From the NCBI GenBank assembly GCA_964106645.2, contig OZ067043.1: DNA of 64,000 nucleotides; one strand, 5' to 3'. Positions 1,314 through 34,166 of the stretch are shown here, one piece after another. A program made the translations under genes and the position numbers. The first letter of the stretch is position 1, and every line of letters begins with the position of its first letter. The DNA is from Podarcis pityusensis. Its lineage: Eukaryota. Below the pieces are notes generated by a model. It was not told the origin of the DNA. It made no database searches and saw only the letters and a program-made list of their open reading frames with translations.

Positions 1314-1582
1314 CTGCCAACCTAGCAGTTTGAAAGCACACCAAAAAGTGCAAGTAGATAAATAGGTACCGCTCCAGCAGGAAGGTAAATGACGTTTCCG
1401 TACACTGCTCTGGTTTCGGTGTTCTGTTGCGCCAGAAGCGGCTTAGTCATGCTGGCCACATGACCCGGAAAAACTGTCTGCGGACAAATGCCGGCTCTCT
1501 CGGCCAGTAAAGCAAGATGAGCACGCAAACCCCAGAGTCATCTGCAACTGGACTTAACTCTCAGGGGTCCTTTACCTTTACC
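1314..1582 (+). mobile_element. Sauria SINE (Squam1), 5'-truncated
   Basis: Characteristic body CTGCCAACCTAGCAGTT.GAAAGCAC...GCTTAGTCATGCTGGCCACATGACCCGGAA and (CCTTTA)n tail; closely similar to the copy at ~4835-5207. Confidence 0.85.
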
Positions 1583-4834: not shown

Positions 4835-5207
4835 CAGCAGATGGCGCAGTGGTCTAAACCACTGAGCCTCTTGGGTTCACCAATCGGAAGGTCGGCGATT
4901 CGAATCCCCGCGACAGGGTGAGCTCCCATTGCTCTGTCCCAGCTTCTGCCAACCTAGCAGTTCAAAAGCATACTAGTGCAAGTAAATAAATGGGTACCAC
5001 TGTGGCAGGAAGGTAAACAGTGTTTCTGTGCACTCTGGTCACAGTGTCCCGTTGCACCAAAAGTGGTTTAGTCATGCTGGCCACATGACCCGGAAAGCTG
5101 TCTGTGGACAAATGCTGGCTCCCTCAGCCTGAAAAGCAGATGAGCACCACACCCCATAGTCACCTTTGCCTGGTCTTAATTGTCCATGGGTCCTTGACCT
5201 TGACCTT
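4835..5207 (+). mobile_element. Sauria SINE, near full length
   Basis: tRNA-like head (TGGCGCAGTGG A-box-like, GATTCGAATCC B-box-like), Sauria body, (CCTTGA)n tail. Confidence 0.88.
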
Positions 5208-6470: not shown

Positions 6471-9400
6471 ATGAGAGCAGGAGGGACTTAACCCTTTCCA
6501 GCAACACCATTTCCCACTATCTGAACATCTCCCCTCACTCCTTAGGCTGCTATTTGCCTTGCAGGGAATCTACATAGGTTCAAAAGTGGCAAATAGCAAC
6601 TGGGGGTGGGATTTAGATCAGGAAAATGGCACTGGGGGGAATGTTCACCTCTCTTCCCCCATTCCACTGCTCTCATGCAGTTCAGACCACCACCACCCCA
6701 TACCCTGCAGCTGTTTTTTTAGCACTGCAAAACACTGAGAGAGCTTATCTCCTCCTACATAATGTGTGCAGTTTGACTCTAAGCAGGAAATGTGGATTGG
6801 ACAACTGCTGATAAGTCAGGATTCTTTATCGCATGGGTCATGTTAATAATAATAAATCTGGCCTCTAGCACGGTTTGCACTGATAGATCCTGAAGCTTAG
6901 AGACGTGAGATTCTAAAAATAACAAGTCTACTTCCAAGCCCTCCACCCCCTTCTTTCTGAGCCTTCCTTAACCTTGCACACCCTTGGTTAAGACAGAAAT
7001 CTATTCTTGCCTCACCTCGGGCCTTGTGAAAAATAGCATTACTGTCATATGCATATAAATGGCTTTCTTTGCTGCTGTGTTTCATGCTGTAAAGTATTTG
7101 TTTTCACAACTGGCATCACTTTTAGCAACAAAAATGAGGCTATGAGCTTGCAACCATTGCATCACCCAGCAGCTACATTTTAAAGTCCCGCTGATTTCAG
7201 TGGAAGAGATTTGTAATGGAAGATATTTTAAGCACACGCTTACCATTCCTGTTGAACTAAATGAGACTTTAACTGAGCAATCCTATACACCATTTTGGGG
7301 GGCAGGGAGACACTGCTGCTGCACCTACACAAACATTTGTGAAAGCCCACTATTGCCCAGTTCAGGAGGAGGTGAGACCACACGAAGTCCTATCATAACC
7401 AACACTTCAACACAGTGATATAAGCTGGGTGGCTGGCAGGTTGGAGAGGGTTTCATGGTTTTTGGGTGTTTTTCCTGCCTTGCATAAACAGACGTGTTTT
7501 CTATTACCACAAAACTGCCATTGAATTCAACCTAATAGTTATTAGACATGCACAGTCCAGCTCAATCTGATCCAGACTGTATTTTAACATAGTCATTACC
7601 AGGGGCCCTGGTCACTTCACATGCATATTTTTCCAGTGAGCTACTGTAACAATCCCAGCAACTCAGGTTTCTTTTATGCCAACCTCGGTGCAACATGGGA
7701 TCTGTCTTGCTGTCCTGAAATCAACAGCAACTTCTCCATGGAGCTGTATGCACTTCACCACTTTCCTTTGGGGGACATCACTGATGATTCCACTCAGGCC
7801 CTCAATGAGCCGCTCTCCAATACTGAGGGTGTTGATCGGGTTGCCAGCTGGCCAGATAAAACAGCTTTGCTTGCTCATGTGCTTTCGACAGCCACTTGAT
7901 CTGCAGAAATCAGCAGGAAAGGCTTTCACTGGGAGAAAGAAATCAATAGTACCTGCTGCTATCTGCACATCAAACTGCTCTCAAAGGAGGGATGGGGAAC
8001 CTGTGGCCCTGTGGATGTTGTTGGACTCCAACTTCCTTCAGCCCCAGCCATCATAGTTACCAGGAATGCCGAGGGCTGATGGGAGTTGGGCCATAGGTGG
8101 CCCGTCCCTGTGTTAGGGAGACAGCAGCCCATCAAAGAAGCTGGCAAACATGAAAGCTGAATCTTGGGGATCTGTGATTCCAGTTATGAAATTGTCATCT
8201 ACTGAGCCCTCTGCATCCCTGTTGTTGGCCAATGCCCGGGTCATCATCATATTACCAAAACTGAGAATTTTGTTTAACATTTAAGCACCGGCTGCAATCA
8301 GAACAACAAACAGTGGTGCAAAACACTACTGCTGCTTGATTGTCTGCCAGCAATGCACTCAGTTAACCTGCCTCCCTTCTTATCCTTGTTGACAAGATTA
8401 ATATCGGGCATTTTGTCTGAAATGGAGCCTCAGTTCAGGCCCATTTATCCTCTTTCCCATTAGCAAGACATTCTGTGAGCTCTTTATCAGGAGCTGGCAG
8501 ATGGGGGCTGTATTTATCATGGCTGCCCAGAAACTCAGTCAGCTTTGGGGGAAATAGCAGAGCCTGTCAGATTCAGCCTAACTACAGGTGTGCTCGGTTT
8601 CTTCTCCTAGAAAAGTAAAATGCACACACATGCAAGAAAAGAAAAGAAAACCCCATAGTGGTACTTGAGTCAACCAAGCACCCAAAGTCAAACATTTGGT
8701 GAGTAGGCTGAACAAATGATCAGTGGGAGCAAGCAACTGGCACTGAGCCTGACTTGGGGTGGGGTGTTAGGCTCTTCCCAACGCAGCAAGCATAGGGCTG
8801 GCAACACCCCTTGCGCAGTGATTCCCAAACACCCAACATCCCACCCATCAACCATGTGATGCCATAATGACACCATGCAACTGACAGATGAGTTGTTAAC
8901 CTGTCCTGCTCGAAGCCAAACAGTTCCCCCACCTCTTTGTAAGAGGGTAGGGCAGTGGGCCTGAACCCCAGGTCTATATATATATAACTTTGCTTACACT
9001 AAAGCACAGTACTCATCATCTTCATTTGCCCGGTAGTGTCTATACATATAAATTAACACGTGAATGTTGTTTTTTAAAAAAATGTGTCTTGGGCCTGTGC
9101 CCCAAGTCCTTTAAGTAGCTTCTAGCAATGCCCCTGGAGCCAGGGCCCTATCCCTGGAAGGAAGAGGAGCCCAAGGCTGTGCATGCAGCAGAGTGAGATG
9201 GCAGAGTAGACTGTGCAGCGTGAATGCAGAATGTCCTCCAGTTGCCCCTCTTCTGTCTGGGTAGCTGCCTTTTTCCGATCCCTTCTTTGGTGGAAATCCC
9301 ATGGCCCTATCATCTCAATTTTTAGGAAGAAACTAACTGCATTCCCTCCCCACTTCTTACTTATTTAGGAATACAGCAGCTGATGCCCAACATAGGCATC

Positions 9401-10747: not shown

Positions 10748-12942
10748 AGAACTGACTTGTGTTAGCTTGATATTGATGGCATGGATTATTATTTTTAAAC
10801 TTACTCCCTAATGGAAAGCACTAATGAGTCCTTGCTTTGAAACATTAATATGTTTTAAATTAATAATCTCTTACCGCAATGGATTGCACAATTGCTTTCA
10901 TTTCATTTTCAAATGATCTAAGGCAGGGGTGGAAACCTGTGGGCCATTTATTACCCCCCTCCCCCAGTACTTTTTTTACCTCCAAGATTCCCAACCGCAA
11001 ATGACTTCCTCCAAAGAATTCTAGAAACTGTAGTTTACGCCTCACAGAGCTACAATTCGCAGCACCCTTGAACTACGATTCCCAGGACTCTTTTGGGGAG
11101 GAAGGGGAGAGATGTGCTTCAAATTATTGCTGCCATAAAAAATAAAAATAAAAATTATTGTTGCCAACAAAAGGTCAAAGGGGCAGGAGACTTCCAAGGT
11201 GCCCTGAGGATAATTTCTGGATTAAGACAGTGAGCCCTACAAAAAAACTCTGGGGCACAATTTTGAGCAATCTGTTTAGCAATGATACAAGTGTAAAAAG
11301 AGTACGTTTAAAACTCCAGTTCACGTGTACGTGTCTACCTTCAACGTGACTTTTCTCATTTGTAAGCACCCAATGGGGCTGTGTTGGGTAACGCCTTAAC
11401 TGCCTGGAGTGTGTGCACCATTAATGCCAAGTACCGTTCAGTCGAGTAGCATTTCAGATTGCTTGATGCATTCACCTGAAGATGTGTTCATGTCACTTGA
11501 TGAGGAGTACAGTATCTCTCCATCTTGAGGTTTGGCATTTTCTCTTGATTTGCTTTGCCGGTGCCTGAAATTGATTACCTCAGCTAAACCCACATACGTC
11601 GCAGTACATAATGTGCAAGGTTTTGAACTCCTTTGATCTGAGATTATGTTTTATATCAACCAATATAAAATGGAACTGCTTTGTTTATGCTGAACAAATA
11701 CGAAAACATAGGGATGAGCCCGGAGAGCATACCCAGATCATAGCGAAAACTAGTAACAGGGGAGCTAGAATGATAACAGGTATTTGCTGAGGAATACAAG
11801 TAGGGAGGAGATACCTAGAGTTGGGGTTACAAGGCTCTAGGAAATCACAAAACAGTGGGGAAACAGTGGCAATTTTCAGGCTTTGCTTCTGTTTTGTATT
11901 TTGCATTGTAACAGATTTCTTCTGCGTGTGACCTACAGAAAATGAATTGACTTGACATCTGCTTAATCAGATTGCATTAAGTAGATGTATTTGACTTTAA
12001 GCCAATTTACCCATTCCATGGGAGCTGTAAATATCTGAAAACTTGCGGGCACTCTGAGATGTTCTTATAAGAGGTAGAAACCCCACCACACAGTTGAACA
12101 GTTGTAAAAGTTAGAACCATGGCTGCTCTCCCTATAGCCAGGCAATCCCCAATCCTAAATCTGTTATTTAACTACAGGAGGGAATGACAAGGGAAAGGCT
12201 CTAGAATATTTCAGAGAGCGCTCTTCCACATATGAGCTCCATCACCTATTAAGATGATCAGGAAAGCCCCCCTGCCCCCCGTGTATCCTATGCTCAACAG
12301 GACTGCCGTGGAATGGAGCAGGGGCTTCTTAGCAGTGGCCCTGAGGCTTTTGAATTGTCTCCAAATTCACCTCCATAAATAATAAAGGAGTCGTGCATCT
12401 GTTCAGGCCTTTGGTAGCTAGGAAGAGAGGAGTTTGAGTCTGCTGTTTTTGATGTTTCAGTCAAAATGAACTGTCTTGGTTTTTCAACTTCCATTCGTAA
12501 AGGTCAGCCCACAGTGCTGCCACCACATATTGACATCTTCTCGGTTGGGTGATAGCCAGAAGCACAAAACAATCACTGCAGCATTTGCTGCTTCATTTGT
12601 GGTACTGTTAGGTTAGAGCCTTCAGCTGCTTCACTGCAGTTGCTTGCCCAGTCTGAGCATAACCCTCCATGCCCTCTGGAAATTAAAGATTAGCTCAGTT
12701 TCCTTTCAGGCCGCTCACTTCCAACACTGGTTTTGTTAGGAGACTGAGGTGCAGTGAGTTATGGCTAGCAATGAAGAAGTTTTCAGTTCTTCCATGATCT
12801 TCTAGATGCAGAACCCAACTCAAGAAAATAGGAGGCCTTGCAGGGCCCATACCTTGAGCAAGGGAACGAGTGGTTAGTATTATCAGCAACCTTTAAGAAC
12901 ATGTGAAGCAGGTCTGTTTGTTGGACATGAATTTACTGGGAG

Positions 12943-15900
12943 TCATGTACTTTCAAAATCTGAGACAGGCGAGGATGATGGGAACACAACATTTTCAATA
13001 ACAGGCTGCTCTTCTAGCTCAAAAGGGGGTGGTGAAACAGCCCCACCTGGCTCTTCCTCTGGATTGGGAGGAGTTGGAAACATAACCCCTTCTTGGTCAG
13101 GATTCTCAAAAGTGAGAGAAGGCAACAGGGGAGAATCATCTTTTTCAGCATTCTCCAAAGTGGGAGAAGGCAACAGGGGAGAGTGATCTTTTTCAGCATT
13201 CTCCAAAGTGGGAGAAGGCAAGAGGGGAGAGTCATCTTTTTCAGCATTCTCCAAAGTGGGAGAAGGCAAGAGGGGAGAGTCATCTTTTGGGGAGTCCGGA
13301 ACAGCAAGGACTGTGACTTCTTTTTCCTGCTTGGTCTTGCCATCGCCTTTAGGAAAAGAATCCTGTTTCTTCTTCCTTCTACGACGGAAGTACCAGCAGC
13401 AGCTGCACAGAGACAGGGAATCTTTATTACCATAAGGCATGTGGATCTTAGTAGGCACCCCTCCCATACAGCTCTGGTTGCCCAGAACCCCACAAGCAAA
13501 ATACAGGGAGGGACACATATAAGGAATATGGAAGCCAGATTCATAGGAAAGTGGTAACATCCCCCTTGCCCAAGAACTCTGTTGGGTTAGGGCAGGGGTA
13601 GGCAACCTAAGGCCCATGGGCTGGATGCGGCCCAATCGCCTCCTCAATCCGGCCCGCGGATGGTCCGGGAATCAGCGTTTTTTTCCATGAGTAGAATGTG
13701 TCCTTTTATTTAAATGCATCCCTGGGTTATTTGTGGGGCCTGCCTGGTGTTTTTACATGAGTGGAATGTGTGCTTTTATTTAAAATGCATCTCTGGGTTA
13801 TTTGTGGGGCATAGGAATTCATTCATTACTATTTTTTTCAAAATATAGTCCGGCCCACCACATGGTCTGAGGGACGGTGGACCGGCCCATGGCTGAAAAA
13901 GGTTGCTGACCCCTGGGTTAGAGTGTGCTGGTTAGGGTATCTTGGCCAGGATCAGGTGGTGGTTACTGAAAACAGTGATAATAATCAAATTGTAGAAAGG
14001 CATGTGGGGAAACTATGCAAGGGGGCTGTATTCAGAGGAAGGGCAAAGGTGGAATGAAAGCAATACCTGTTTGGTGCACTCTAGTCCCAGAAGCCAGGAA
14101 AGTAGAGAACTGGTGGTGCAGATATATGATCCCGTAGTGGAGGCATTCCCTGGGCACCCCCACCCCCAATTATCTGTGATAAGTGGTTGCACAGCCACTG
14201 TCATTTCTTGGGACCCTGCACTCACTTAATGACCAGCCACACATCTCTTTGGCCCACTAAATTTTACAGATGTGGGCTTAGACAGGAAAGAAGAAAACCC
14301 AGAACTCACAGCACAATGATACAGAAGCAAGTAAGCAGCAGGACGACAAAGATCACCAACAGAGCAGGAAACCCATGTGTTGGAGGGACTGCGTGGAAAG
14401 AGACACAGATTACTCAAGAGTGCCAGTTCTCCTCAGCACCCAGAGCCAAGCTGCCTATCCAGCAGCAGCACCCGCCTCTATTACCGTATTTTTCACCCTA
14501 TAGGACGCACTTCTTCCCCTCCAAAAATGAAGGGGAAATGTGTGTGCATCCTATGGGGCGAATGCAGGCTTTCGCTGAAGCCTGGAGAGCGAGAGGGGTC
14601 GGTGCAGACCGACCCCTCTCGCTCTCCAGGCTTCAGGAAGCTATCCGCAAGCTGTGGGAGAGCTGCATGACTTCGCGCAGTTCTCCCACGGCTAGCGGAG
14701 AGCTTGCCTGCACCCAGAAGCTTGGGGCGCGCTGAGCTCAGCACGCCCCAGGCTTCCAGCTTCGCGCAGCTCTCCGCTAGCCGTGGGAGAGCTGCGCGAA
14801 GCCCCACACCTGGGGGGGGGATAAAAAAAAATTCTTTATTTCCCCCCCCCAAAAAAACTAGGTGCATCCTATGGGCCGGTGCGTCCTATGGGGCGAAAAA
14901 TACGGTAATTTCAGGAACTCGAAAGTTAAACAGGAGGTGAGCTTAAGTATCACAGTGGAAAGAAAGGCCAAAGGGAAATAGGCAGCCAGTATAAACAAAC
15001 ACTGTTTGGACCAAATTCACACATGCACAGAACTGTTCCCTCACTAGATGCTCGTATATATGGTTGCAGTCTAGGAGCGCTGTTTCTTAGGTACCTAGGA
15101 ACACAAGAAAAGCCTTGCTAGCTCAGGCCAAAGGACCACCTCCTTCAGCATCTTGTTCTCACTGAGGTCTGCAGGACATGAGTGCAACAGTACTCACCTG
15201 TAATTCTGAGTAACTGGTATTCAGAGGCATACTGCCTCCAATAGTGGAGGTGGAACATAGCCATCTGAAGATAAATCTGTCTTTGGATTTAACATACAGG
15301 TTTGAGGGGACATTAAGTATACAGAGCATCACCTTAGGGGAGATGGATAATTAACACGATCACAGGAGGTGAAATTTAACTCTCCTGTTCTGAGTCTTGT
15401 GGTAAGAATTTACTTCTACATCACTCTGTCTGTTACCCAGATGAGGGGCCACCTTTTAAATAAAACACAGAATGAAGGAAACTAATTCAAGCCCAGCATC
15501 CAGGACTGAAGTAAATCCCTCCTCTGGAGCTAGTATTTCCATTGGGAAGAAATTCCCCATTGCGGCAAATCTTCCCAACTTCAGAGGAGAGATTTTTCTC
15601 AGGACTGCGGCAAGGAAAGAGTTAAAATCCCTCCCTTCACCCCCCTACAATCATGATACTTATCAGCCGCAGCCACACAGCTGATGCTATGTGCATTTTT
15701 TAAAACCTTGAACATATTTCATGTTGTGTCTAGCTTGACTCTCAGTATGCTAAGTCCAAGAACCAGTGCTGGAAAATCCAGAGAGGTCTCTCAGGAAGCC
15801 CTTCCTCATGTCACCCACCTGATACATACCTTCTGGGCTCATGCATTCCGCAGCTGTTCTGGCAGCAGGGTGCAAGGTTGACCCGTTGTGGTAGCACTGA

Positions 15901-18900
15901 ATGCACACAGTTGTCCCATAGCGCAGACTATATGTTCCGTTTGGGCAGGGAACACAATTTCCAGCTGCAGCCACACTATATGTTCCAGGAGGGCACGCAG
16001 CTGTCAAGCAAAATGGCAGATAAAGGCATGGAGGGGGGAGCGAAAGGAGCAGAGCCTGAAATACAGACAGCACACAGGTTTCATTCCTCCATCAGCTAAG
16101 CTGGAGGGGTGGGGAGGGATTAGGGAGAGAGGGATTTCAAGCTGGCCGCATACCATGTGAACCCTACCCAAGGGGCATCCTTTTTCAATCATCCTCCTCA
16201 AAGGAGTTGTGGAGAGGGTGTCTCTTCCTGGAGTTGAGGGAGTCATGCTTAGCGCAATGTGCTAAACAGGTGGACAAAATAGCTCTGACTGAATGGAATT
16301 AAAGAACGGATCCAAGGGCTGTGTACACACCATGCATTTAAAGCATGTGACTTCCCCCCCCCAAAAAAATTGGGAACTGTAGTTTATTAAGGGTGCTGAG
16401 AAATATAGCTCCACGAGGGGTGAAAACTAAAGTGTACACAGCCCAAGGGCACCTGGCAGAGCTACAGTGAAACTCTAGAACAGTCTTTCCCAACCTTGGG
16501 TCTCCAGCTGTTTTCAGACGACAGTTCCCATCATCCCTGACCACTGGTCTTGCTAGCTAAGGATGATGGGAGTTGTAGTCCAAAAACAGCTGGAGACCCA
16601 AGGTTGGGAAACACTGCTCTAGAGGAAGGGAAGGTAGAGAGAAGAGAGCCATTACAAACCCAGTGCTCTCCAGATGTTTTGGGGCTGGTGGTAGTTGTGT
16701 TCCAAAACATCTGGAAGGCACTGGGTTTGCAAAGGCTGGGGTGACAGCTAAGAACAAATGTGGCGAGAGGCTTCCCAGTGACGTGAACAAACACTGCAGC
16801 CTATGGGACCAGAGGCAGCGTCTGAGGAGGGATGAGGCAGCAGCTCATGGATCACCTGCTCCACTCACTACAGCAGTCGGGACAGCGTGCCTGTAGCTCC
16901 GAGGTCTGTCCATAACCTTCCAGGCATGTTCCACCCTCCAGGAAGTTGACAAAGGTGTTGACGAAGGAGGTGCGGGAGGTGGGCGCCTCTCCCAAGGGGA
17001 AACGTTTGTTGTTCTCCATGAATATGGTTATTGCTTCCTCGGCCTGTAGGGAGATGCATAGGGTGGTTCAAGAGTGGGGGAAGGAAGACTGGGAGGTCTG
17101 CTTTTTGTTATTGATCTGTTTTTCTGAAAAAGGAAGGAAAACAGGATTGCAGGGAAAACAGAGAAGGATAAGAATCTGATGACAGGGTCATCACAAGAGT
17201 GAGTGAACAAAATGTGGCAGTTCCATAGTAAATACCTAGAATGCAAGTATCCATCCTTTCTTTGAAATATGCATAACCATGGGGTTCTTGCTTTTATTGC
17301 CTCAAAGTAAATAGCCCCAGCCATTCCATGTGCAGCAATGCACATTAGCCTTGTTCCAGAAGATAAAAGACATGGTTGCCCTTTGCAGCTCAACAACATA
17401 TGTAGGTACAAAACCCCAGCAAACTTATTTCCTGGTAGGGGAGAGATGAAGTTTGGTGACGTACCTGCTGCAGATTGCTCAAGACAGCTCCATTATAACA
17501 ATCAAATTCCAGTGCATCAGCCTTGGGGGAGCAGAACTTATCCCAGCCCTTCCCAAAAGGAGATACTAGAAAACAATGACAAATATGTTACGGTCCCTTT
17601 GCCAATAGGCTCGCTCTTCCATCAGTGCACACAGAGTCCAAACCCTCATTCCAGGATATGGCAAAATAGATCCAATATAATGCTTGCCTGAATGCAGTTA
17701 AGTAAATTATGTTAATTCAACTTAGCGCAACCCTCCAGATCATGATACATATCCATTGCCACCCTTGCTGCTTAAGAAATGTTCCTCCGGCAATCCAAGG
17801 GAATGTACCTTTACCCAAAATCTGTCTGTTCTCAGCAAAGACACACACTGAGGCTACACTTACTTCTGGTGTTTTCAATAAGCAGTCCTAGCTGGTGAAA
17901 TCCTGCCTTTCTGCACGAGCCTCTCCTGCTCCAAACTTCACTTCCTCCCCAAACTGTGACTGAACCCAGCCAACCTGAGTTCCTCTGCCATCCTCTAGAA
18001 ACACCCTGAATTTCTTGGCTCTGACCTTCAAGCTCTACCTGGAAGTTGAACTCATCCAAAGGTTTCTCCATGGTGGGGAAGCAGCTGATGGCGCCAAGCA
18101 GAAGTTCACAGTGGAGGTGGTGCACCACCTCGCTCAGATGCTCTCGCAGGGTCTTCAGGAACCCATGCGTCAATTCCTCATCGCAAGAGTTGCACTGAAA
18201 AAGGAGTAGGACGTGCAGCTCTGCACGTATGTGGTAGCCTGGGGAAAGAGGCAGAGGAAGGGGAATCTGGAAGGCAACTTCTCCTACAAAAACAGGAGCT
18301 CAAAAGACAGCAAAAGTCACATCTTCCACTTCATGTCCACTATGAAGAAGTTCAAGAAGACGGAAAGAAATTGCAAACACCTAAGAAAGACTGTGGATCC
18401 TCAGGAGAACAGAGAGAAACTACCTATGTTTGGCCACAGCGTCTGGCCACAGGCCAAAACTTCTCCCACATTTCTCCCAATATATGTCCGTCCGTCCCCC
18501 ACCACTAGCTTCCTCTTGGTTCCAGCCAATCACCCATCTAGTCAAATAGTTCAGTCCCCTTTGTTTCACTATCCTTCAAGACATCTGGAATCCACTCACC
18601 CACCACTGTGTGATAGAAAGTTTTAGTATGGAGCTGGCCATCCGTGGTGTAGGAGACTGTGCAGACATACAGTCCACTGTCATCAGTATGAAAATCATGC
18701 AGAGTCAGGGAAGCATCACCACTGAGGGGATGGGTTCCTGAAAGTAGAGGGCAGAATCAGCCTAAGAAGAACAATGTTCTGTTACAACCAGCTTAGGCAC
18801 CAATACTGAGGGGTCAAGAGAAACCCCCGGTCCTTTAATACTTCTATAGCTTCATGTGGCTCTCGGCTCATAGGTACATGGATGCATCGAGAGAGTCTAA

Positions 18901-21540
18901 TTATTTTCTGCTGACCTTATGCCATGAATGCCCATACACAATACCTTTCTTGAATCCCGACATTCTACACCATATTTTCTTATTATAGGAACCATGCACT
19001 GGGTAGCTGAGATTGGCAGGTACAGTTAGTCAATATTTTGTGACATGCTGATACTATTTTACAACCAGGTTTTGGGTTGGGAAAAGCAAGTTGTCTCACA
19101 GCTTGCTTCAGTTATAACTTTTAAGTAACAGGAACCTTTAAAAGCTGAGCTCTGAGTCTATTTCACTTCCAGTAGTTCTGATGTTTTTGCCAATATGCCT
19201 GTTGTGAAGAATAATCTGTTGAACTCTCCAGACTTTAATTTGGGCAGGCAATTTCAGGCCAACTTGGTTTTACACCTGGGAAGCTTAACAGATGCATCAA
19301 TGTGTTTGCGAGTTACCTTTTCATGCATCTTCAGGCCTCACCCCAAGCAGTGATTGAACTGGTATAAGAAGTAAAGATGGGCTCCTTAATGAAATCCACA
19401 GGGCCCAATCCCCACTCACTCCAATTTTAGCCACATAATGGCCTCTCTGTAGCATTAGGAGGAGGAGTGACATAACATGGGCTCTTGCCCAAGGCACAAG
19501 GACACAGAGGGCATAGACAAGACTAAACTAATTCTCAACATAAAATGCTTGGGAAATATTATCTTGGGTGCTAAAGTTCAAATCAGTCTGAGGTGCAAAA
19601 AAATCTCTGTTGCTGATCATTCTAGAAAAAACATTGGCAGTCCTGGGACACCAACAGGTGCCTTTTCCCAAGTAATCCAAACTCTTCTTTTCCTCACACA
19701 TCTGTCCCTGACATCTACTGAAAGATCCTAGAGTCCCAAGCAATAAGGCCTAACCTTCATTTTCCAGGCTCCAGTTGTAGGTGGGATTCATACCAATCAC
19801 AACATCCATCTCTGAAGACTTGCAGGGGATAGTAAATTCCTTGGCACCAATGTGGACAAAGATGGTGTCTGAAAAAACAGGCAGGTATTGTGGTTAGCAT
19901 GTCTGACTAGAACCAGGAAGACCCGGGTTCAAATCCTCCCTTGGCCATGAAGCTCCCTAGATGACCTTGAGCAGCCACTACCTCTCAGCCTAATCTACCT
20001 CATAGGGTTGCTGTGAAGATAAATGGAAGGTGGAAGAGCTGTGTACTCTGGCTTGGGCTTTCTGGAGGAAAGACAGGGTTTAAATTTAGTAAAAAATGAA
20101 TAAATCAGAAGAATCAATTTGGCATTGGTGACAGGGCAATGGGAAAACTAGGTTCTTGGTTGGGCTTTGTGTTAATGGGCACAAATCATCTAATGATCAT
20201 CTATCGCTTGGCTAGCTCAGGTGGCCAGATTGAAGTGCCAAGGCCATGGATTCAAGGCACAGATCAGATGGCCACTGAAGATGGATGAAACGAGGCCGCA
20301 GTGATGATGTCCCCATTTATTGCTTGTTTATTTTACTTAATGCAGTGTCAGCTAAATGGAACTGATCTTTGTTACAGTCTCACCCAGCTCTCCAGCTGTC
20401 TTTCTAACACGTGCCAGTCCTGCAGGAGTTCCACTGTCAGACAAGTCAAGGTGAAGTCCACAGCCTGAAAAGGAGCAAAGACCTCCTTCTGTAAAGTATC
20501 ATACTGTAAAGTATCATTACAGACTTAACTGCTGTATCTGTGTGTACTCAGCAATAAAGCAATGGTTCCCAGCTTCATGGTACATTGTGCAGTCTGAAAC
20601 TCACCCCGGAGCTCCCATGTTTTGACCAGGGAGAGTCGGAGGTTAAATTGGGATATACTGGCAAATCCCCAGATGACACAGTATTTCCACAACAGCAAGT
20701 AAAACTGATATATATCTGCCATTGCTGACTTTGTAGAAATCACTTATTTCTCAGCCTCAGTGTTCCTCAGCTGGAAGGTAGGCAGCAATCTTACCACCAT
20801 ACCCAAAAGGAAGCCCTATTAAATTCAACAGGACTTCCTTCCGAGTACACATGGGATTGCATTATTGGCTGCCGCTGGCCAGTTTTAGAGTTCTGTGTTA
20901 AAATCCCTAAACTGCAGTAACTCAGATGTTGAATTATTAATTATATATTTATTTTTTGATGTAGTTATTGTTACATTTTCATTTGTGTATGTAGTTTATT
21001 CCAGTGTATGGTTTGTGGGGTGGAACAGGTAATTCTTCCTGCTGAACCACCCTTTTCCATGGGGTGCCAATCCTGTTCCCACCGCCACCTTTGTACAATG
21101 TGGCTCTGTACTGTCCACCCACCCCAGCCAGGATCTTGCTCCTGACACCATTTGGTAGACCTCAGGATGACAGCAATATACAAAGCCGGTTTCAAAAGTC
21201 TCAAATTGAACTTCACTCCAGCTCTCTAGCTCCATGCAAGGAGCCATTTCGGTCCAGAATATTGTGTTTTTGAGCTGCCTGCGAGGCGATTCCATCCGTT
21301 TTTGTGGACAGATTCGAATGTTAATTGAATTAATAAACTCGTGTAACAGGCAGGCGTTTAGGAGACCGTGCTCTTGGCTCTTTCCACAAGCAACTGCAGC
21401 TCTGATGTGCTACCACCACATCCTCGAGGAGACACCCGGCTGCAGCCGAGCCCCTCGATAGCACCCTTCTCCGTACCGGGCCCATCGCACAGCAATAGGA
21501 CTAGGATCCCCAAAGCGACGCCGGCCGACCAGCAAGACAT
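12943..21540 (-). CDS. ZPBP/sp38-family (zona pellucida-binding protein-like) type-I transmembrane protein, 10 exons, 531 aa
   Basis: Exons 21477-21540, 20384-20464, 19755-19868, 18600-18737, 18026-18238, 17465-17565, 16869-17043, 15830-16000, 14310-14388, 12943-13402. All introns GT..AG with matching phases; 1596 nt, no internal stop. Signal peptide MSCWSAGVALGILVLLLC; Ig domain (IPC..PTYNW..LTLHDFHTDDSGLYVC); sp38-like region (CNSC..FLKTLREHLSEVVHHLHCEL; TCLEGYG..RCPDCCTACPPGTYS); TM FPALLVIFVVLLLTCFCIIVL followed by CCWYFRRRRKKK. Confidence 0.88.
13101..13290 (-). repeat. Coding minisatellite, 48-nt unit x ~4 (DDSPLLPSPTLENAEK)
   Basis: Unit ggcaa(c/g)aggggagagtcatctttttcagcattctccaaagtgggagaa repeated in the last coding exon of the ZPBP-like gene. 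Confidence 0.95.
13593..13915. mobile_element. hAT-type MITE
   Basis: CAGGGGTAGGCAACCT...AGGTTGCTGACCCCTG; 8-bp TSD ggttaggg/ggttagag; same family as 41372-41622. Confidence 0.85.
14484..14905. mobile_element. Tc1/mariner-type MITE (CCGTATTTTTC TIR)
   Basis: TA-CCGTATTTTTCACCCTATAGGACGCAC...GTGCGTCCTATGGGGCGAAAAATACGG-TA; GC-rich palindromic interior. Confidence 0.85.
16481..16616. mobile_element. Near-perfect hairpin hAT MITE
   Basis: CAGTCTTTCCCAACCTTGGGTCTCCAGCTGTTTT...AAAACAGCTGGAGACCCAAGGTTGGGAAACACTG; TSD ctctagaa/ctctagag. Confidence 0.85.
19882..20090 (+). mobile_element. MIR-like/CORE-type tRNA SINE
   Basis: TGGTTAGCATGTCTGACTAG..CCGGGTTCAAATCC B-box; CTACCTCATAGGGTTGCTGTGAAGATAAA core. 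Confidence 0.65.
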
Positions 21541-22010
21541 GTAGCCAGACTTAAGGGCGATCTGTCCTATTCTAGAGCCCCCCGTGAGAACGGAGAGGTC
21601 TCCGGAATCCCTGCAAGAGCCATGCGGTTGCTACGCAACCTAGAGCTCCTTCGTGACGTCGAGGCGTTCTAGAACCCATCTCCGCCACAGTCCCAGCGGA
21701 AGACGCTGCTAAGGTTGCTTACGCCTCTGATTATTTCTGGTCCTCGGCAGCCCCCGTCCGCGCGTTTTTTACGTCATCCGATTGCGACAACCTGGAAGCA
21801 ACGGTTTTTCGGAAACTAGGCGGCGTTGTGTTCGAGGTGAGGACTACCGGAAGGTAACGAGCAGCGTTGTGTCGCCTTAGAAGCCAGGAAGGGGTGGCTA
21901 GAGGTGAGGGGCTAAAGAGAATAGGTGCTGGGCGGGTGGCAATTGACACCCTTGGGCGTGTTTTCTCCTCCTAGGTTCTTAGCTTTTTATTGTTTTCTCT
22001 TCTCAGCGCC
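21541..22010. promoter_or_regulatory. CpG-island bidirectional promoter, ZPBP-like / SNAPC2
   Basis: CpG-rich, 470 bp between divergent ATGs; X-box-like GTTGCTACGCAAC (21627-21639); CRE-like TGACGTCG (21654) and TTACGTCA (21769); ETS-type CCGGAAG. Confidence 0.75.
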
Positions 22011-24595
22011 ATGAAGCCGCCCTCCAGGCAGCGTTCAGCCCCTGCTCGCTACAGGACGGCCCCCACGAGCCAGGCTTGGACGGACCCAGAAAAGCGACGC
22101 CTTCTTCGGGCCCTGAGAGCTCACGGCCAGGGTCCGCTGCGGCCCGAGCTGTTGAAGAAGTACCTGCCTTCGAGGGATGAAGAAGAGGTGGGTGGCCACG
22201 TGGTGGAGGGCAGGATTCGAACTTGGCCGGGCTGTGAGCTTCCTAACAACCCCACGAGTTGGCGGACTGATGGCCAGCATGCAGGGTTTGGAGACGAGGA
22301 CTCCATCTCTGGTCAGCCACGAGAGCTAGGTGGCCTTGGCAGATAAATCGTAAGGGACGACTTGGGAGGATGAATTGGGAGAGACTCCTTTTTTAATCCT
22401 TCTACACATTCATACTGGCAAATCCTAGTTAAAGGGGAGTAATTGCAAACTTTCTGCCTTGAAGAAATACTCCATTTTTATGTCTTCAGAAAGTAGAATA
22501 CTGTCTTTCCCAAAACATTCCATGTATGTCCCCTAAGTTGTGCTGCTCTTGCAGATCATGGCATTTGTGGAGCACCTGAAAGAGCGTGTGGCAAAGGAAG
22601 CAGTCAAGGAACAATATCAGTATCGCCAGCGTAAACAGAAGGATGCTCCTGTTCCAGCACCTATTGAGGTATGAGAGTTTTAAAAGTGTAGGTAATGTGA
22701 TATGGCACAACATAAGCTAAGGGCTATTCACACAACTGACACTTCCTTTTTTTTTTTTTTTTAAGATATGGACAGAGTTAGCTGAGAAATTGACAGGTCC
22801 CCTTGAGGATGCTGTTGCAACTGCTTTTTCCCAGGTAACCTTTTCCATGATCTTAATAAGATAGATATTGTTCTTGGTGTAGTAATTTAAGATATCTGTA
22901 TGTCTCCATCTGACAAAATGTCTCTGAGATACATGGCTCTGTCCTGGTTCTTTTGGTTCTTTTCTAACTTTTCAGACAGATTTAATGCTGGGAAATGTAT
23001 TTGGTTTACTAGAGAATCCCTGACTGCTTGGCATACAAAGTCCATACTTGATTGTGACTTTTTCTCTACTCATTAGGTTTGGACAATTGCATCTACTGAG
23101 CCACTCACCTTGCTCCATTCCGTGCCTCCAAAGTCAGTGGTGATAAAGAATTCTCAATGTTCATCCCAAAATCTTCATAGTGAGAGTAGGAAATCCAACG
23201 AAGAATCTCATGAACCAACTGTATCATCAGATGTAGAGGAAATAGCCCCTGCAGAAAACAGTAGCTTCCATGTGGACTTTGAAAAGATCTACAAGTACCT
23301 TTCTGTGATCTCACGTGGCTGTAAGGCACCTGAACTCCCACCAGGTGGTAAGTTGGTGTTTGTGTTGGACCAAGATGAATTTAAATAACAGGCAGCTACT
23401 AGAAGAAATGTTTCTGCACTGGAATGTGACTCCAGGTAACCAAGACATCTACTACAGCATGCCTACTGTATTCTTGGTGCCAGGCAAAAACATTTCTCCT
23501 TATTGAAGCTGCCTTATTGAGTTTTATCTGCAATCATTCCATCCCTTCCTTTTTATTCTGTTGCTTTTTCTGTATTGTGCCATTTTTTCATCTGCTGTGG
23601 AGTTCTATTTCAGCTGAAGGGCTGGACACTAAATCTTTAAAATGCTTCCCATAAATGGAGCATCCCCTAGGACTGGAAACACTATGTGTCCTGCCAAAAA
23701 CTGTACTCCTTCTGCCAAAACTTCCAACATATTTAGTGCTACTAAAAGCAACAACTACCTTGCTGGGCATAGTTGGGTAACCTTTGAGGTTACTGTTGTG
23801 GATGATGGGTGGGATTTGGGGGACTAAGGAAAACATTTCAGAAGGGAATTGCTTGTTTCTCCCCACTCCCCAGTGAAAATATGAGTGGCCCATGAGCGTG
23901 GAGACAGGGAGAGTTTTCCTAGGTGAGAGGAAGCAGCAACCTGTCATATAATGTAAAACAGATAAAAGGTTCTCATCAGATTTCCAGTCTTTAAAATAAA
24001 ATTTCTTATATAGAAAGTTATCCTTAACCTCTAAGACGTAATTTTTAAAAATCTAAAATAGCTTAGCTGTTAATGTGAGAAAATTTACTACTTCATTTGT
24101 TACACATGTTGGAGGCAGGGTGAAGTTTCAGAATCTGTAACTGGGGAGCAGGAGATAAAAAAATCCTACCTATGTTTCTGCCAAAGTGAGTGTAGCCACT
24201 CTCCTCATACATTTTGCTTGCTTTCTGCAGAGTCAGCTGTGGTCCTAGATTTGCTACTGTCACTGCCAGAAGAGCTGGGCTTTCTAGACTTCAAGAAGCT
24301 GAAGAGTCACATGCACAAATGTTACACAGAGTTGAACACCCACTACACAGGTGAAAGAAGCAGAATGAAAGAGGGCAACCAGCCTGGAAGCAATAATGGG
24401 GAGCTATTTCCACATGTGCAGCCAGCTACTACTGGCTTACCACAACAGGAGGAGAGTAGTAGTTCTCCTACCACTTCCAAAGATGATGCAAGTTCTGCCT
24501 CTGCCATGGACTGGAAGACTCTGGGTATCTGCCCTTTGAATCCATTCTTGTTTCCTTTAGCTATCCTTGCACGTAAAGAAGAAAGCTTTGACTGA
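22011..24595 (+). CDS. SNAPC2: snRNA-activating protein complex subunit 2 (SNAP45), 5 coding exons, 331 aa
   Basis: Exons 22011-22187, 22555-22668, 22766-22834, 23077-23347, 24231-24595. Motifs MKPPSRQRSAPARY, PAPIEIWTELAEKLTGPLE, AFSQVWTIASTEP, VDFEKIYKYLS, ESAVVLDLLLSLPEEL, GICPLNPF. Confidence 0.95.
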
Positions 24596-26144
24596 GGGAA
24601 CTGGATTCTGTGCTGCCCAGTAATGAACTATGTCCTCTCATAAATGTGAGGGAAGACTAAACAAGCTTGCTGAGCTTTCCTTAGCCATGATCCCCCTCAT
24701 CGTAGCATGGGGGTTAAAGCAGCCTGACCTGCTCTTTTACACCTTGGCTCATGAGTATACTTGTTTTGTATTAATATATGTACACTGAAGTCTGGTCTTA
24801 CTACTCCATGACAGCTGCTAGATCTTATTTGGCCAGTTGCTGTGTAGCAGCTCAGAGATGGCCTTGAGTGTTAATCTTGACCTTGGTCTACAGATCATTG
24901 TGGTTAGTATAATAAGTGATGTTGGATATCATTCCTGAGTCACAGAGTAGTCAAATTATTTTGTAATAACCGTTTTTTTAAAAAAAATATGAAAAATATC
25001 AGTTGCAAAGCTGTAATAATCTCATATTACTTGCCAAGTGCCTTTTGCCTTCTACCTGTAACATGCTCACCAGGGGTTACCTTTAATACATTTTGAGGAG
25101 CTATAGAAGCCATGAAGGCTTTAACTGAAATAAACTAGGCAAAGTTAACTTATAACATGCTTAGGAATGTTACTGTTAAGCAATGCTTGGTGATGCAGTA
25201 TATCTTCTTGGAAGAAATGCCCCCCATCTACCACTAACACAATACTGAACTGTTATAGTGGTAGGCACTGAAGAATGCAAAGATGAAGTTACTATGTTAT
25301 GGCATAGAAGCATAAATGCTACAGCAGTCTGTGTCAAAACCTAAACCCTCCATGTAGCATTAGTACTTCTTTTATTAAGGAGATATTAGCATGGATATAC
25401 TTGGACTCATAACAGCTCATAGCAGTATTTGCCATAAACTGGTGGAACTGGGGAAAGAAACATAACATAACTAGCACCTTAAGTAATTATTACTTCAAAC
25501 ATAGACTCAATGCACTTCTCAAAATCTGAATTTTAACTGAACCATGTTAACTTGGGAAGGAGTTTTTAGCTCCTAAATTGGCAACATGCATATATAGTTT
25601 AACAAATTATTACAATTTAGCATCTTTGCTTTATTTTATTTGAAGAGGCCTCCTGTAGAGAATGTAAGTAACAGGCAGGTCCTAGAAGACTAGTGTGCCA
25701 TCTTTGTAAACTCAGACTCTTGGCATGTCGTACACCCATTATGTGCTGCACTGAGAGCAACAATTTCGTTCACTTTTATGTCCTTTAAAAATAAAGTGCA
25801 TTCTTTATTATTCAGTGTGTCAAACTCTTGCCATAGGTACAATACTGTCAATGCAGATGTTTGAATTAAAAGACTTACTGAAGGTATGATAGCAGAACAT
25901 CTTACTGCCATTCTAATAACAATTTTTGGTAAAAAAAAATGACTTTTAGGTTCATCTCTTGAACTATGATAGTCTATGGAAAATGTTTCCAGGATGTTGT
26001 TCTACTGCTAGAAAACAGAATGATTCTGGAAGTATCAGGAGCTGCAGTGCAGAAAATCCATGAGCTGATTCTCCATGGAAGAAGTTTCCCACTTAGTGGT
26101 GTAGATTCAATAAAAGTACAAGGAGCAATAAAAGTATGTCAAGT

Positions 26145-29100
26145 TCAGGCAGCCTCTTCATTTTCTTTATTAGCTTGAATAGAGGAGTGCAGCAAAGCCT
26201 AAAGAACAAAAGTAACAAGTTATACACAGCTACTCACACTTTGTATGATCCCCCAGGGGTGGAGGAAGAAGGGGTGTGTGGTGGGGGTGGGCCGCCCCAG
26301 GTGTCGCCACTGAGGGGGGGTGACAAAAAGCAGGGCGGCACTCACCGCGGGGCCCGCATCGCGCCTGAGCCATGCGTCTCTCCTGGGAGTAACACGATGG
26401 CTTGGGTGCCAGCAGGCTCCACACTGCCCCAAACGATCCACCCGACGCCTCTCCCTCAGCTGTAGGGCGGCTGAGTGGGAGGAGGCAGGCAGACTCCTCG
26501 GAGGCCCCACAGAGCGTCCTGCCCCGGCTTGGGTGGCCCCGCCCCTGGGCACAGGGCATGTGTGCCTCCCCAGGTGCCCAATCAGCTTGCTCCGCCACTG
26601 TGATCCGGGGGGGGGGGACATTTCTGCCATATGGAAGGAAGGGGCAAGGATTCACTATGATCTTCCACTACTTTTTTCTTTAATAAAGTATGGGCTTGTA
26701 ACAGTATATTCTTCTTCGGAGAGGGAAATGTAGGGAAGATACATTTTGCAATTAGGGCTGCAGACAGATTAGGGCTGCTGACTCAAGAGCATTGTGTCTA
26801 TTTCAGGGTTACAGAGGAATGGTGGCCAGATATCCCTAATTCACAATGCCCTTAGTCACCTGTGGCCCTTGTTCCAGGCTCCTATATTGCCCTTTCTCCC
26901 ACCCTCCTCCCTTTGCAGTTTATACAACACAAAATCAGAATATCTACGTTGCAGATGGTTATGGTAGCCTAGTGGCAGATTATCACTTTACCTGGGTTAG
27001 AAATTTGTCTCTCTTCAAGTGTCTGTAGAACTGCAACACGTATGGATTGGCTCTCACTACCTTGGAATCAAAATCCAGAACACGAAGACCTGCAAGGCTA
27101 CGTGCTCGAGAAAGTGCTACATAAGCCTGGCCAAATTCAAAAACACGAGCCAAGGAAATCTCAACGCAGTCCAGAGACATACCCTAGTAAAAGAGAAAAA
27201 GTCAGGAAGCAGATACTCCCTAGTCTGATAAGTATGTGCACCCCCAGTACAGTAAAGTACCTATATATTTTATGTATGATGTTTGATTCCACAAAATGGG
27301 TACCAGGCAAATAGGAAGAATTAACACTGCTGAACAACATTTCCACAGTTCCCTCACCCTTTATAATTTTGTTTGCAGGGTGGTGTGATTTTCGATTTTC
27401 GAGATTTTCGATTTTCTAGAACAGCCACATGTTGCAAGGAAAACAGCTTGAATTTGATTGGTGTACAGGATTGGTCTGCCTAGATTCCACTGACTTATAA
27501 TTAATTGGGGCAAACGAAGACAAATAAGCAGATTCTTACAGATTCTGCATAGATGTGGGGTCCAACTGGTAACATCCAACATTTGGTGGGAGCTTTAGTA
27601 CAGATAAACCTAGATAAACACAAGTTCCTTAAAGACGTCCCATTATGGACCATTTTTACTGTCTTGAGTTCTTGTACAGAATATCACACAATGTATCACT
27701 AACCTGGCTCTTGTGGATGGAAATGGCCCAGGCAAGTTTCAGCGGCAGCTGCTGGCGACTCAGATAAATTCCTGCTGGTCCCTTAAAAACCCATCGTTCC
27801 AACCCAACAACATTAGTGACACCACACAGAAATCTCACTTTCGGTAGCCCTGTAGAAAGAGAGCCAAGTCAGAACTTTGATCTCCTATGCCCAGGAGTCA
27901 GGGGCAGGTAACCTCCCAAATATCTATTGTCTTTAAGGAGATACTGCAAGGCAGCCTAGAACTCATCCACTTGAGTTCTTGCAAATGGGACGCCAATAGA
28001 ATAGCAGCTCATGTACAAAAAACTGGATGGCAAAGAACAGCAACTATGTCTCAAAAAATCCTCCACCTCTGGCACAGTGCAGAGGCACCCACCAAAGTTT
28101 CATTGTGAATCTAGAAGAGTTCAGACACAGTCCGAAGAACACCCAGTCATGGGTGATAAGTGCATCTGTCAGAAACTAACCTTTTCCTTCTGTTTCAAAT
28201 CCAATCACAACTCCACGAGCCCCATTCACAAGACCTTGGGACACATCAAGATTCTTAGTAAGCATCACCTAGTGAAAGAATGTAAAAATTACTAATGAAG
28301 AAAAACACCCTAGCTTTCACCTGTCCAGTCAGTCGACTTTATTGTACATAGTCAGCATTAACAGTAGAGTCTCAAGAACTGCCACTGAAAACAAGCAAGA
28401 ATGTCCCCACCCTGTTCCTCGGGTAGGGAAAGCCTCATACTTGTTTGGATGTTATTCATTGTATACACTTACCCTGCTTTTCAAGAAGGCAGCACACAAG
28501 GTAGATAACCAAACAAACAGTCAAATATTAAATACATACATATGAGGCCAGAAAAAACCCAGTAATCCATCTAATAAAGTGAATAATGTGTTGAAAATGG
28601 TAACTGGTCTCAGTTAAACTTTAATATTACAATACAATCACAGTTAAACAGCATCACAGATTTGCCACCCATATTTAATAGCTGGGTGCAGCTCTTAAAA
28701 GTCAAGGGCTCTGTGGCATTTGGCATGGCCTGACTTCCCAGTTTTAAGGTTTAAAAGTTATCGAAAGCAGTGCACAACCAGCTCAAATAAAGCAAATGGT
28801 AGCCACTAGGGTCCATAAGAGTATCATTTCACTCAGCTGATACTCTAGGTTCTGTCATGTAAAGATCTGTCCAACCTAGCCATGGCAGTGCAGGTAACAA
28901 TTCCTGAGAAGCTATAATCAGTGCTAGCCAGTCACGCATTTGTAAGAGAGAAATCAGTATTAATAGAATGCAAGGAGTAATTGAATTGCTCAGCAGGTGA
29001 AATACTGAGCACATATAAATAGTTTGCAGATGTGTCCAAGCCTATAGCTCTGACATTCCAAGCTACAGTCAACAATTACCTGTAAGTGCCACCATGACTC

Positions 29101-33753: not shown

Positions 33754-33859
33754 CCCGTCCGACTGAAAACGAGGAGGCAACGCAGAAGTCGAGACCTGCA
33801 AAAATGTCTGTACTGAAAAAACGCCGACTTCTTACTGACTTTCCCTTTCGCGTTGATTT

Positions 33860-34166
33860 CGGCAGCCACTTATTTCTCCCATGTGCCTAAATAACTCTTC
33901 CAGCCGTGCCTTCGCTTCTGCCGCAAGCGGATTCAAACCTTTAACGGGGGTCGCAGCAGCCAATCAGCGCTGCGGGAGATTTAACTCCTCGGCCAATGAA
34001 ATAAAGAAGGGGCGCGGTCAGAATCCCGGCGCAACTTTCGGCTGCGACGTTCCGCTCGGTTGCTAGGATACGAAAAGGTGGGGAAACGCCGCCCGCAACA
34101 TACACGAAGGGCATTTCGGGGCGCTCCGGGCACGTTCTAAATAGCCTGCCACCCAGATAGCGGCAG
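33860..34166. promoter_or_regulatory. CpG-island bidirectional promoter, PIF1 / CFAP144
   Basis: CHR TTTGAA on the minus strand (33932-33937); CCAAT boxes at 33960 and 33993; RFX X-box GTTGCTAGGATAC (34059-34071). Confidence 0.78.

What the first reader, a model, noticed from the sequence alone, without database searches (positions are those of the whole stretch)
12943..21540. Intact hidden gene for a membrane-anchored ZPBP/sp38-family protein (candidate reptile sperm-egg receptor)
Seen: ten minus-strand exons with canonical GT-AG sites and matching phases splice to a stop-free 531-aa protein: signal peptide, Ig domain, sp38-like region, Cys-rich module, TM helix, acidic/Pro tail. Established: mammalian ZPBP1/ZPBP2 are acrosomal proteins with an Ig domain and a C.PGYG..CP.CC..C.PG.Y C-terminus, and they end there with no TM or cytoplasmic tail. 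Here the same Cys spacing (TCLEGYG..RCPDCCTACPPGTYS) continues into a TM and a ~150-aa tail. Inference: a divergent third ZPBP lineage acting as a type-I receptor on the acrosomal or sperm membrane, with no counterpart I recognise in human.
Basis: partly seen in the sequence, partly recalled or inferred. Interest (0 to 1): 0.92.

Follow-up and report, generated by a model that had tools for sequence, protein, structure and literature searches.

The report
Membrane-anchored third ZPBP gene of sauropsids
Reptiles and birds carry a real, expressed third relative of the sperm acrosome proteins ZPBP1/2 that, unlike them, is anchored in a membrane; databases already list it as "ZPBP2-like", I found no study of it, and its role in fertilisation is untested.

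Summary
The gene is real: ten GT-AG exons give a stop-free 531-aa type-I membrane protein, and RNA-type contigs from related animals join exons 4 to 10, including the TM and tail exons. It is not hidden: RefSeq/GenBank list it as "ZPBP2-like" in Podarcis (window about 99% identical to P. lilfordi), and single orthologues with the same intron positions occur in snakes, other lizards, turtles, alligator and about 45 birds including chicken. No mammal, amphibian or fish hit was found, with limited search sensitivity. Architecture: signal peptide, Ig, ferredoxin/SEA-like domain, Sp38 C-terminal Cys module running into a full Ephrin_rec_like repeat, TM, fast-drifting acidic/Pro tail. Pfam and Atlas place it in the ZPBP family as a cluster separate from ZPBP1/2; birds keep both canonical genes, so it is most likely a third paralogue (no tree with ZPBP1/2 was possible). 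Conserved alternative splicing also predicts TM-less forms. Most likely role, inferred: membrane anchor of the acrosomal matrix. A sperm-egg receptor role and testis expression are untested. No paper found. The scan had not noted it on other DNA.

The parts
21477..21540 (-). Exon 1 (coding part): start codon and signal peptide, aa 1-21
   Evidence: aligned with N-termini of orthologues; intron position shared
20384..20464 (-). Exon 2: end of signal peptide and variable linker, aa 22-48
   Evidence: present in P. raffonei/muralis/lilfordi models; counterpart in viper, alligator, birds
19755..19868 (-). Exon 3: first half of Ig domain (Cys64, Trp81)
18600..18737 (-). Exon 4: second half of Ig domain (DSGxYxC, Cys112)
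   Evidence: Pfam V-set E 3.9e-6, Sp38 E 0.005; RNA joint to exon 5
18026..18238 (-). Exon 5: first part of ferredoxin/SEA-like middle domain
   Evidence: RNA joints
17465..17565 (-). Exon 6: Cys215-Cys226 loop and long helix of middle domain
16869..17043 (-). Exon 7: end of middle domain and start of the Sp38 C-terminal Cys module (CxxGYG...CPDCC)
   Evidence: EGF_Sp38_C 28.8-29.8 bits against cut-off 24 in near-identical Podarcis proteins
16856..16868 (-). 13-nt extension of exon 7 to an alternative donor at 16855; frameshift, stop in exon 8, 307-aa TM-less form
   Evidence: contig record 21 of run X7; translation; same C-terminus in Pogona X4 and Varanus models
15830..16000 (-). Exon 8: complete Ephrin_rec_like (GCC2/GCC3) Cys-rich repeat
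   Evidence: Pfam E 2.1e-10, profile 1-48 of 48
14310..14388 (-). Exon 9: transmembrane helix; cassette exon, skipped in some transcripts (frameshift, 481 aa)
   Evidence: included in X1, X5, X14; skipped in X7 record 21; isoform X3
12943..13402 (-). Exon 10 (coding part): Cys-Cys and basic juxtamembrane run, acidic/Pro cytoplasmic tail, stop
13097..13288 (-). Four 48-nt in-frame tandem repeats in the tail (each with DDSPLL-type motif); copy number varies among lacertids
21541..22010 (.). CpG-rich head-to-head promoter region shared with SNAPC2 (ATG near 22011, + strand)
   Evidence: CpG o/e 0.75 in 21001-22000; SNAPC2 Pfam; same arrangement in viper and P. lilfordi

Best explanation
A functional, single-copy sauropsid gene encoding a type-I membrane member of the ZPBP/sp38 family, separate from ZPBP1 and ZPBP2. 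Shown: gene structure, splicing, family membership, TM and tail, conservation from lizards to birds. Predicted: Ig domain, then a ferredoxin/SEA-like domain without the autocleavage motif, then a Cys-rich module next to the membrane. Inferred mechanism: it is made in spermatids, travels ER-Golgi-proacrosomal vesicle like ZPBP1/2, and sits in the acrosomal membrane with its ectodomain in the lumen, where it ties the soluble matrix (ZPBP1/2, proacrosin) to the membrane during acrosome compaction; after the acrosome reaction the ectodomain would be exposed and could add secondary adhesion to the egg coat. The tail is a disordered, nearly neutrally evolving spacer or trafficking handle, not a signalling domain. 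Confidence in the identity part is about 0.9; in the acrosomal anchor role about 0.5.
For: Exons and ORF; RNA joints in 4 studies; orthologues in squamates, turtles, alligator, birds with all nine introns shared and a gene tree that largely follows the species tree; ectodomain dN/dS 0.30-0.56, tail 0.75-1.7; 14 of 16 ectodomain cysteines (aa 49-352) invariant in 24 sequences; EGF_Sp38_C in 48 and Sp38 in 39 of 54 members; Atlas features 0.86/0.85 to ZPBP1/ZPBP2 clusters and own cluster 0.95; shape match TM 0.53 over model residues 1-283 to a 330-aa ZPBP cluster; TM in 102 of 117 stored family sequences, isoforms included; mammalian ZPBP1 lies on acrosomal membranes and matrix and its knockout fails at acrosome compaction (PMC7827414; PMC10483240); no tyrosine in the tail.
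Against: No tissue information: run metadata were coded and none is on record as RNA. No paper or proteome entry found. In squamates it shares a CpG-island promoter with housekeeping SNAPC2, which could allow broad expression. No tree with ZPBP1/2 could be built because no tool returned those sequences. Family resemblance does not fix function. The fold match to SEA domains is only Z 8.9, tied with ribosomal S6.
Confidence: 0.5

Rival explanations
1. It is a sperm-side receptor or adhesion protein that binds the egg's perivitelline layer or plasma membrane directly, working like IZUMO1/SPACA6/TMEM81.
For: Type-I topology with N-terminal Ig; the Ig model matches IZUMO1 (Z 10.1, rmsd 2.3, 86 aligned) and SPACA6 (Z 9.1); weak Izumo-Ig Pfam hit in Pogona, E 0.0026; fast evolution of the middle domain in birds (dN/dS 0.58-0.93); ZPBP1 is described as a secondary zona-binding protein.
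Against: The IZUMO1 match is among dozens of unrelated Ig domains with similar Z (IL-1RAcP is higher, 11.2); no four-helix bundle or hinge in the model, and the Ig is membrane-distal, whereas in IZUMO1/SPACA6/TMEM81 it follows the N-terminal module; ectodomain acidic (pI about 5); the basic zona-binding motif that I recall for porcine sp38 has no counterpart in the alignment (memory, not tested); no dN/dS above 1 in the ectodomain.
Confidence: 0.2
2. It is a somatic or broadly expressed surface/endolysosomal glycoprotein unrelated to fertilisation, using the Ig-SEA-Cys-rich module for adhesion or cargo sorting as SCUBE or ELAPOR1-like proteins do.
For: Shape matches to SCUBE1 (TM 0.55) and thyroglobulin; ELAPOR1 among weak profile hits of the Cys-rich part; shared CpG promoter with SNAPC2 in squamates; contigs in 18 RNA-like runs of 6 studies of unknown tissue; dileucine-like motifs in lacertid tails.
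Against: Nearest relatives ZPBP1/2 are acrosomal in mammals and birds; relaxed dN/dS and apparent loss in mammals fit a reproductive gene; dileucine motifs are absent in snakes, turtles and most birds; the SNAPC2 linkage is not seen in archosaurs or turtle.
Confidence: 0.22
3. It is simply the sauropsid ZPBP2 (or ZPBP1) orthologue with a longer C-terminus, as the database names suggest.
For: Most database names read ZPBP2 or ZPBP2-like; the chicken copy is on a 5.23-Mb record that by accession order I take to be chromosome 27, the chromosome of ZPBP2 (chromosome number from memory).
Against: Chicken ZPBP2 is listed between IKZF3 and GSDMA, while the chicken, quail, guineafowl, kakapo, turtle and alligator loci show no called neighbour and no C2H2 pattern within 10 kb; three profile or sequence searches that reached 33% identity members never returned a canonical ZPBP1/2; the Atlas holds it as its own cluster beside ZPBP1 and ZPBP2 clusters.
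Confidence: 0.05

Closest known systems
ZPBP1 (sp38/IAM38) and ZPBP2; Pfam Sp38 PF07354 + EGF_Sp38_C PF20626
   Same: Signal peptide, N-terminal Ig, middle domain and C-terminal Cys module in the same order; Pfam hits; shape match over residues 1-283 of the ectodomain model.
   Different: The Cys module continues into a complete Ephrin_rec_like repeat, a TM helix and an 80-300 aa tail; separate locus and Atlas cluster; found only in sauropsids here; lizard Ig scores below the Sp38 cut-off (16 against 23.1 bits).
Database entries 'zona pellucida-binding protein 2-like' (Podarcis LOC114599148 / LOC128415914, CAI5777382; chicken XP_430256; alligator KYO46517)
   Same: The same gene and its orthologues.
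   Different: Automatic names only; the P. lilfordi model has exon 7 mis-spliced relative to this model and to other Podarcis models; no paper names these entries.
IZUMO1 / SPACA6 / TMEM81 (IST superfamily)
   Same: Type-I membrane proteins with one Ig domain of similar shape.
   Different: No four-helix bundle or hinge disulfides; Ig is membrane-distal and followed by SEA-like and Cys-rich modules.
SEA-domain and Ephrin_rec_like surface proteins (GPR126 SEA, MUC16 SEA, Trop2, SCUBE1, thyroglobulin, ELAPOR1/inceptor)
   Same: Ferredoxin-like extracellular domain (Z 7.2-8.9) followed by Cys-rich repeats; inceptor is a single-pass protein needed for acrosome formation.
   Different: No sequence-level relationship beyond the Cys-rich repeat; no GSVVV-type autocleavage motif in 24 sequences; no CUB, EGF array or M6PR domain.

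Membership tests
ZPBP/sp38 family (broad) | Pfam EGF_Sp38_C above curated cut-off | tested here: met
   28.8 and 29.8 bits against 24 in Podarcis proteins 98-99% identical in the ectodomain; single window exons do not hit because the domain spans the exon 7/8 junction
ZPBP/sp38 family (broad) | Pfam Sp38 N-terminal Ig above curated cut-off | tested here: inconclusive
   Lizard 16-17 bits against 23.1; kea orthologue 28.7; 39 of 54 members at E<=0.001
ZPBP/sp38 family (broad) | Same three-domain ectodomain (Ig, middle domain, Cys module) | tested here: met
   Atlas shape match TM 0.53/0.50, 222 aligned, model residues 1-283; features 0.86 and 0.85 (the two Atlas routes are both predictions)
ZPBP1/ZPBP2 proper | Soluble protein ending after the Cys module, no TM | tested here: not met
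   TM and tail exons are spliced on and conserved; only alternative isoforms lack them. That ZPBP1/2 lack a TM is from established knowledge and cluster lengths of 278-349 aa
ZPBP1/ZPBP2 proper | Locus beside IKZF3/GSDMA (ZPBP2) or IKZF1 (ZPBP1, from memory) | tested here: not met
   Window neighbours SNAPC2, PIF1, EBNA1BP2, WD40 gene; bird, turtle and alligator loci show no C2H2 pattern within 10 kb; for chicken ZPBP2
ZPBP1/ZPBP2 proper | Phylogenetic grouping inside ZPBP1 or ZPBP2 | not testable with these tools
   No tool returned canonical ZPBP1/2 sequences; tree has no outgroup
ZPBP/sp38 family (broad) | Spermatid expression, acrosomal location, zona binding | not testable with these tools
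   Run tissues are coded; no literature found
IST superfamily (IZUMO1/SPACA6/TMEM95/TMEM81) | N-terminal four-helix bundle or three-stranded sheet linked by hinge disulfides to a membrane-proximal Ig | tested here: not met
   Model has Ig first, then alpha/beta domain; definition from PMC11052572
SEA domain | Ferredoxin-like beta-alpha-beta-beta-alpha-beta extracellular fold | tested here: inconclusive
   Topology met (pLDDT 84); best match GPR126 SEA region Z 8.9, rmsd 3.1, 102 aligned, tied with ribosomal S6; no Pfam SEA hit
SEA domain | GSVVV-type autoproteolysis motif (cleaved subgroup) | tested here: not met
   Absent in 24 sequences

The most novel reading that the evidence does not exclude
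The membrane-anchored Ig-SEA-Cys-TM form is the ancestral ZPBP architecture, from which soluble ZPBP1/2 arose by truncation inside the Cys-rich repeat; sauropsids kept it as a sperm-side receptor for the perivitelline layer and mammals lost it. The overlap of the EGF_Sp38_C profile with a complete Ephrin_rec_like repeat (model residues 233-284 and 257-304) and the conserved splice variant that yields a ZPBP-length soluble form fit this, but nothing here shows it.
Probability: 0.15. Interest if true: 0.8.

Novelty: new variant of a known kind. Interest (0 to 1): 0.5.

Why it matters
The ZPBP family is treated as two soluble acrosomal proteins. A third, membrane-anchored paralogue kept from lizards to chicken, mislabelled ZPBP2 in many bird annotations, gives a concrete candidate for how the acrosomal matrix is held on the membrane, or for sperm-egg coat adhesion in birds and reptiles, where sperm-side factors are poorly known. 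The chicken and quail orthologues make it directly testable. The mislabelling also means that published 'ZPBP2' signals in sauropsid selection scans or proteomes may sometimes refer to this gene (not checked). The model also suggests a SEA-like fold for the unannotated ZPBP middle domain.

Tried and rejected
Artefact or pseudogene: rejected. Hidden gene: rejected. SNAPC2 synteny outside squamates: not seen within 10 kb in alligator, turtle, birds; wider synteny could not be read. Exon 7 alone gave nothing in Pfam, PDB sequences or the Atlas. Three homologue searches and one exhaustive search with exon 5 returned only sauropsids; the word-seeded searches also missed known sauropsid groups (no gecko or tuatara hit), so absence in mammals, amphibians and fish is not shown. 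Lobster, mite-like and repeat-protein hits (P0010, P0011, P0013) are repeat artefacts and were ignored. Foldseek on the middle domain gave no match at E<=0.001. Literature searches by name, LOC id and accession found no study; Lin et al. 2007 was not held; the core sperm proteome supplement was cut and did not list this protein. Dileucine sorting array as a family feature: rejected, lineage-limited. As the operators required, the joined spliced model was never sent to a search tool: exons were searched by reference, and public proteins returned by the tools (mainly P0046, 98.7% identical in the ectodomain) stood in for whole-protein scans and folding.

Full report
Observation. The ten minus-strand exons exist at the stated place. 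Spliced locally they give 1596 nt and 531 aa with no internal stop, all introns GT-AG with matching phases. The N-terminus is hydrophobic, a TM helix peaks at aa 362-380, a basic run follows, and the tail is acidic, Pro-rich and tyrosine-free with four 16-aa repeats. There is one copy in the window. The gene is head-to-head with SNAPC2 across a CpG-rich stretch, followed by PIF1, EBNA1BP2 and a WD40 gene that I read as CFAP57. The window is 97.5-99.2% identical to Podarcis lilfordi chromosome OX395131.1, so it is a wall lizard.

Expression. Eighteen RNA-like runs from six studies of related organisms hold part of the region (kind is guessed and tissue is coded). Laying four of them on 12850-18800 gave CT..AC joints at exons 4/5, 5/6, 6/7, 8/9 and 9/10, and one contig carrying exons 6-7-8, 80 further letters, then exon 10. 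Two variants also appear: exon 9 (TM) skipping, which frameshifts exon 10 (481 aa, as in RefSeq isoform X3), and a second donor 13 nt into intron 7, which gives a 307-aa TM-less product whose C-terminus matches Pogona and Varanus models. Its stop lies 146 nt before the next junction, so it may be a decay target.

Not hidden. Exon 5 searched against 1.84 billion representatives hit 100% identical Podarcis models named 'zona pellucida-binding protein 2-like', then snakes, Pogona, alligator and kea. Further searches extended the family to many squamates, several turtles, alligator and about 45 birds including chicken XP_430256. No mammal, amphibian or fish was returned, but these searches need shared exact words and also missed geckos, so the range is a lower bound. 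All nine intron positions are shared with viper, alligator and four birds. The ectodomain tree separates squamates, turtles and birds with full support and largely follows the species tree (the alligator-turtle-bird order is not resolved as expected, and there is no outgroup). Of 117 stored sequences with the CxDCC motif, 102 have a downstream TM-like segment (isoforms and near-duplicates included). Ectodomain dN/dS is 0.30-0.56 and the tail is near or above 1 on poor alignments: a real protein under loose constraint.

Family. Pfam gives EGF_Sp38_C above its cut-off in the Podarcis proteins, and Sp38 below the cut-off in lizards but above it in kea; across 54 members 48 hit EGF_Sp38_C, 39 Sp38 and 49 Ephrin_rec_like. 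The Atlas puts the protein in its own cluster (0.95) next to ZPBP1 (0.86) and ZPBP2 (0.85) clusters, and the predicted ectodomain aligns to a 330-aa ZPBP cluster over residues 1-283 (TM 0.53). Birds have ZPBP and ZPBP2 (PMC7647744), and chicken ZPBP2 is listed between IKZF3 and GSDMA on chromosome 27 (PMC6813082, PMC7786134). The bird, turtle and alligator loci of the present gene show no called neighbour and no C2H2 pattern within 10 kb. It is therefore most likely a third paralogue. I could not build the deciding tree because no tool returned ZPBP1/2 sequences. The SNAPC2-PIF1 context holds in viper and Podarcis but not in archosaurs or turtle, so the neighbourhood changed in one lineage. 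The chicken copy lies at about 1.93 Mb on a 5.23-Mb record that I take from memory to be chromosome 27; if so a local duplication from ZPBP2 is one possible origin.

Structure. AlphaFold on the near-identical P. raffonei ectodomain (pLDDT 82) shows an Ig domain, a beta-alpha-beta-beta-alpha-beta middle domain and a Cys-rich module. The Ig resembles many Ig domains, IZUMO1 and SPACA6 among them but not above the rest, and the IST N-terminal module is absent. The middle domain folded alone (pLDDT 84) best matches the GPR126 SEA region (Z 8.9), tied with ribosomal S6, with Trop2 and MUC16 SEA lower: SEA-like by topology and extracellular context, not shown to be homologous, and without the autocleavage motif. 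The EGF_Sp38_C profile overlaps the first half of a complete Ephrin_rec_like repeat, which suggests that ZPBP1/2 end in a shortened version of this repeat; the same SEA-like plus Cys-rich order is echoed by SCUBE1 and thyroglobulin matches.

Mechanism. Shown: gene, splicing, topology by sequence, conservation. Inferred: function. Mammalian ZPBP1 lies on the acrosomal membranes and matrix, binds zona secondarily, and its loss causes failed acrosome compaction (PMC7827414, PMC10483240). A membrane-anchored paralogue with a lumenal ZPBP-type ectodomain and a tail with no conserved signalling motif is best read as an anchor that holds the matrix on the acrosomal membrane, with possible secondary adhesion after exocytosis (about 0.5). 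A direct egg receptor (0.2) and a somatic surface or sorting protein (0.22) remain open, since tissue is unknown; plain ZPBP2 orthology is unlikely (0.05).

Novelty. The sequence is in databases under automatic names, and I found no paper on it by name, locus id or accession; subscription literature is mostly outside the library. It is a new variant of a known family: a TM-anchored ZPBP clade of sauropsids. The scan's notes hold no other ZPBP finding. A note on this window about dileucine motifs in the tail holds for lacertids and Rhineura only, with scattered unrelated matches elsewhere.

Method note. The joined model was used only in local scripts.

Noticed in passing
window 16856-16868 (-): Alternative 5' splice site 13 nt into intron 7, seen in RNA contigs and matching Pogona and Varanus models; yields a ZPBP-length soluble form or a decay target.
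   Followed up: partly
window 14310-14388 (-): TM exon is a cassette; skipping shifts exon 10 into a second open frame (129 new residues, Leu/Cys/Trp-rich repeats), annotated as isoform X3 in two Podarcis species.
   Followed up: partly
window 21568-21570 (-): ATA where P. muralis and P. raffonei models have an upstream in-frame ATG ten codons before the start used here.
   Followed up: partly
window 21975-34000: SNAPC2 (+) and PIF1 (-) tail to tail, next to EBNA1BP2 and a CFAP57-like WD40 gene; from memory these lie on three different human chromosomes, so this block looks like a squamate arrangement. Same order in viper for SNAPC2-PIF1.
   Followed up: partly
window 8384-8608: About 230 nt conserved with viper (76%) downstream of the gene, with no shared open frame; possibly a conserved non-coding element or UTR of a neighbour.
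   Followed up: partly
window 1313-1524 and 4883-5148: Two segments similar to each other and to one segment of the viper locus (L006:27724-27970); local duplication or old repeat.
   Followed up: no
window 14480-14909, 13630-13910, 16473-16737: Intronic short interspersed or MITE-like repeats with inverted arms; very high contig depth in RNA runs, so high-copy repeats.
   Followed up: no
window 58758-62210 (-): LINE element with long ORF1 (498 aa) and ORF2 (652 aa) stretches.
   Followed up: no
L001:21526-21952, L003:20938-21362, L002:15426-15566, L005:15999-16227: Non-coding element conserved downstream of the gene in alligator, turtle and birds but not found in the lizard window.
   Followed up: partly
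P0002 (P. lilfordi CAI5777382): The public model appears mis-spliced in exon 7 (frame switch that removes the CPDCC region) compared with other Podarcis models and this window.
   Followed up: partly
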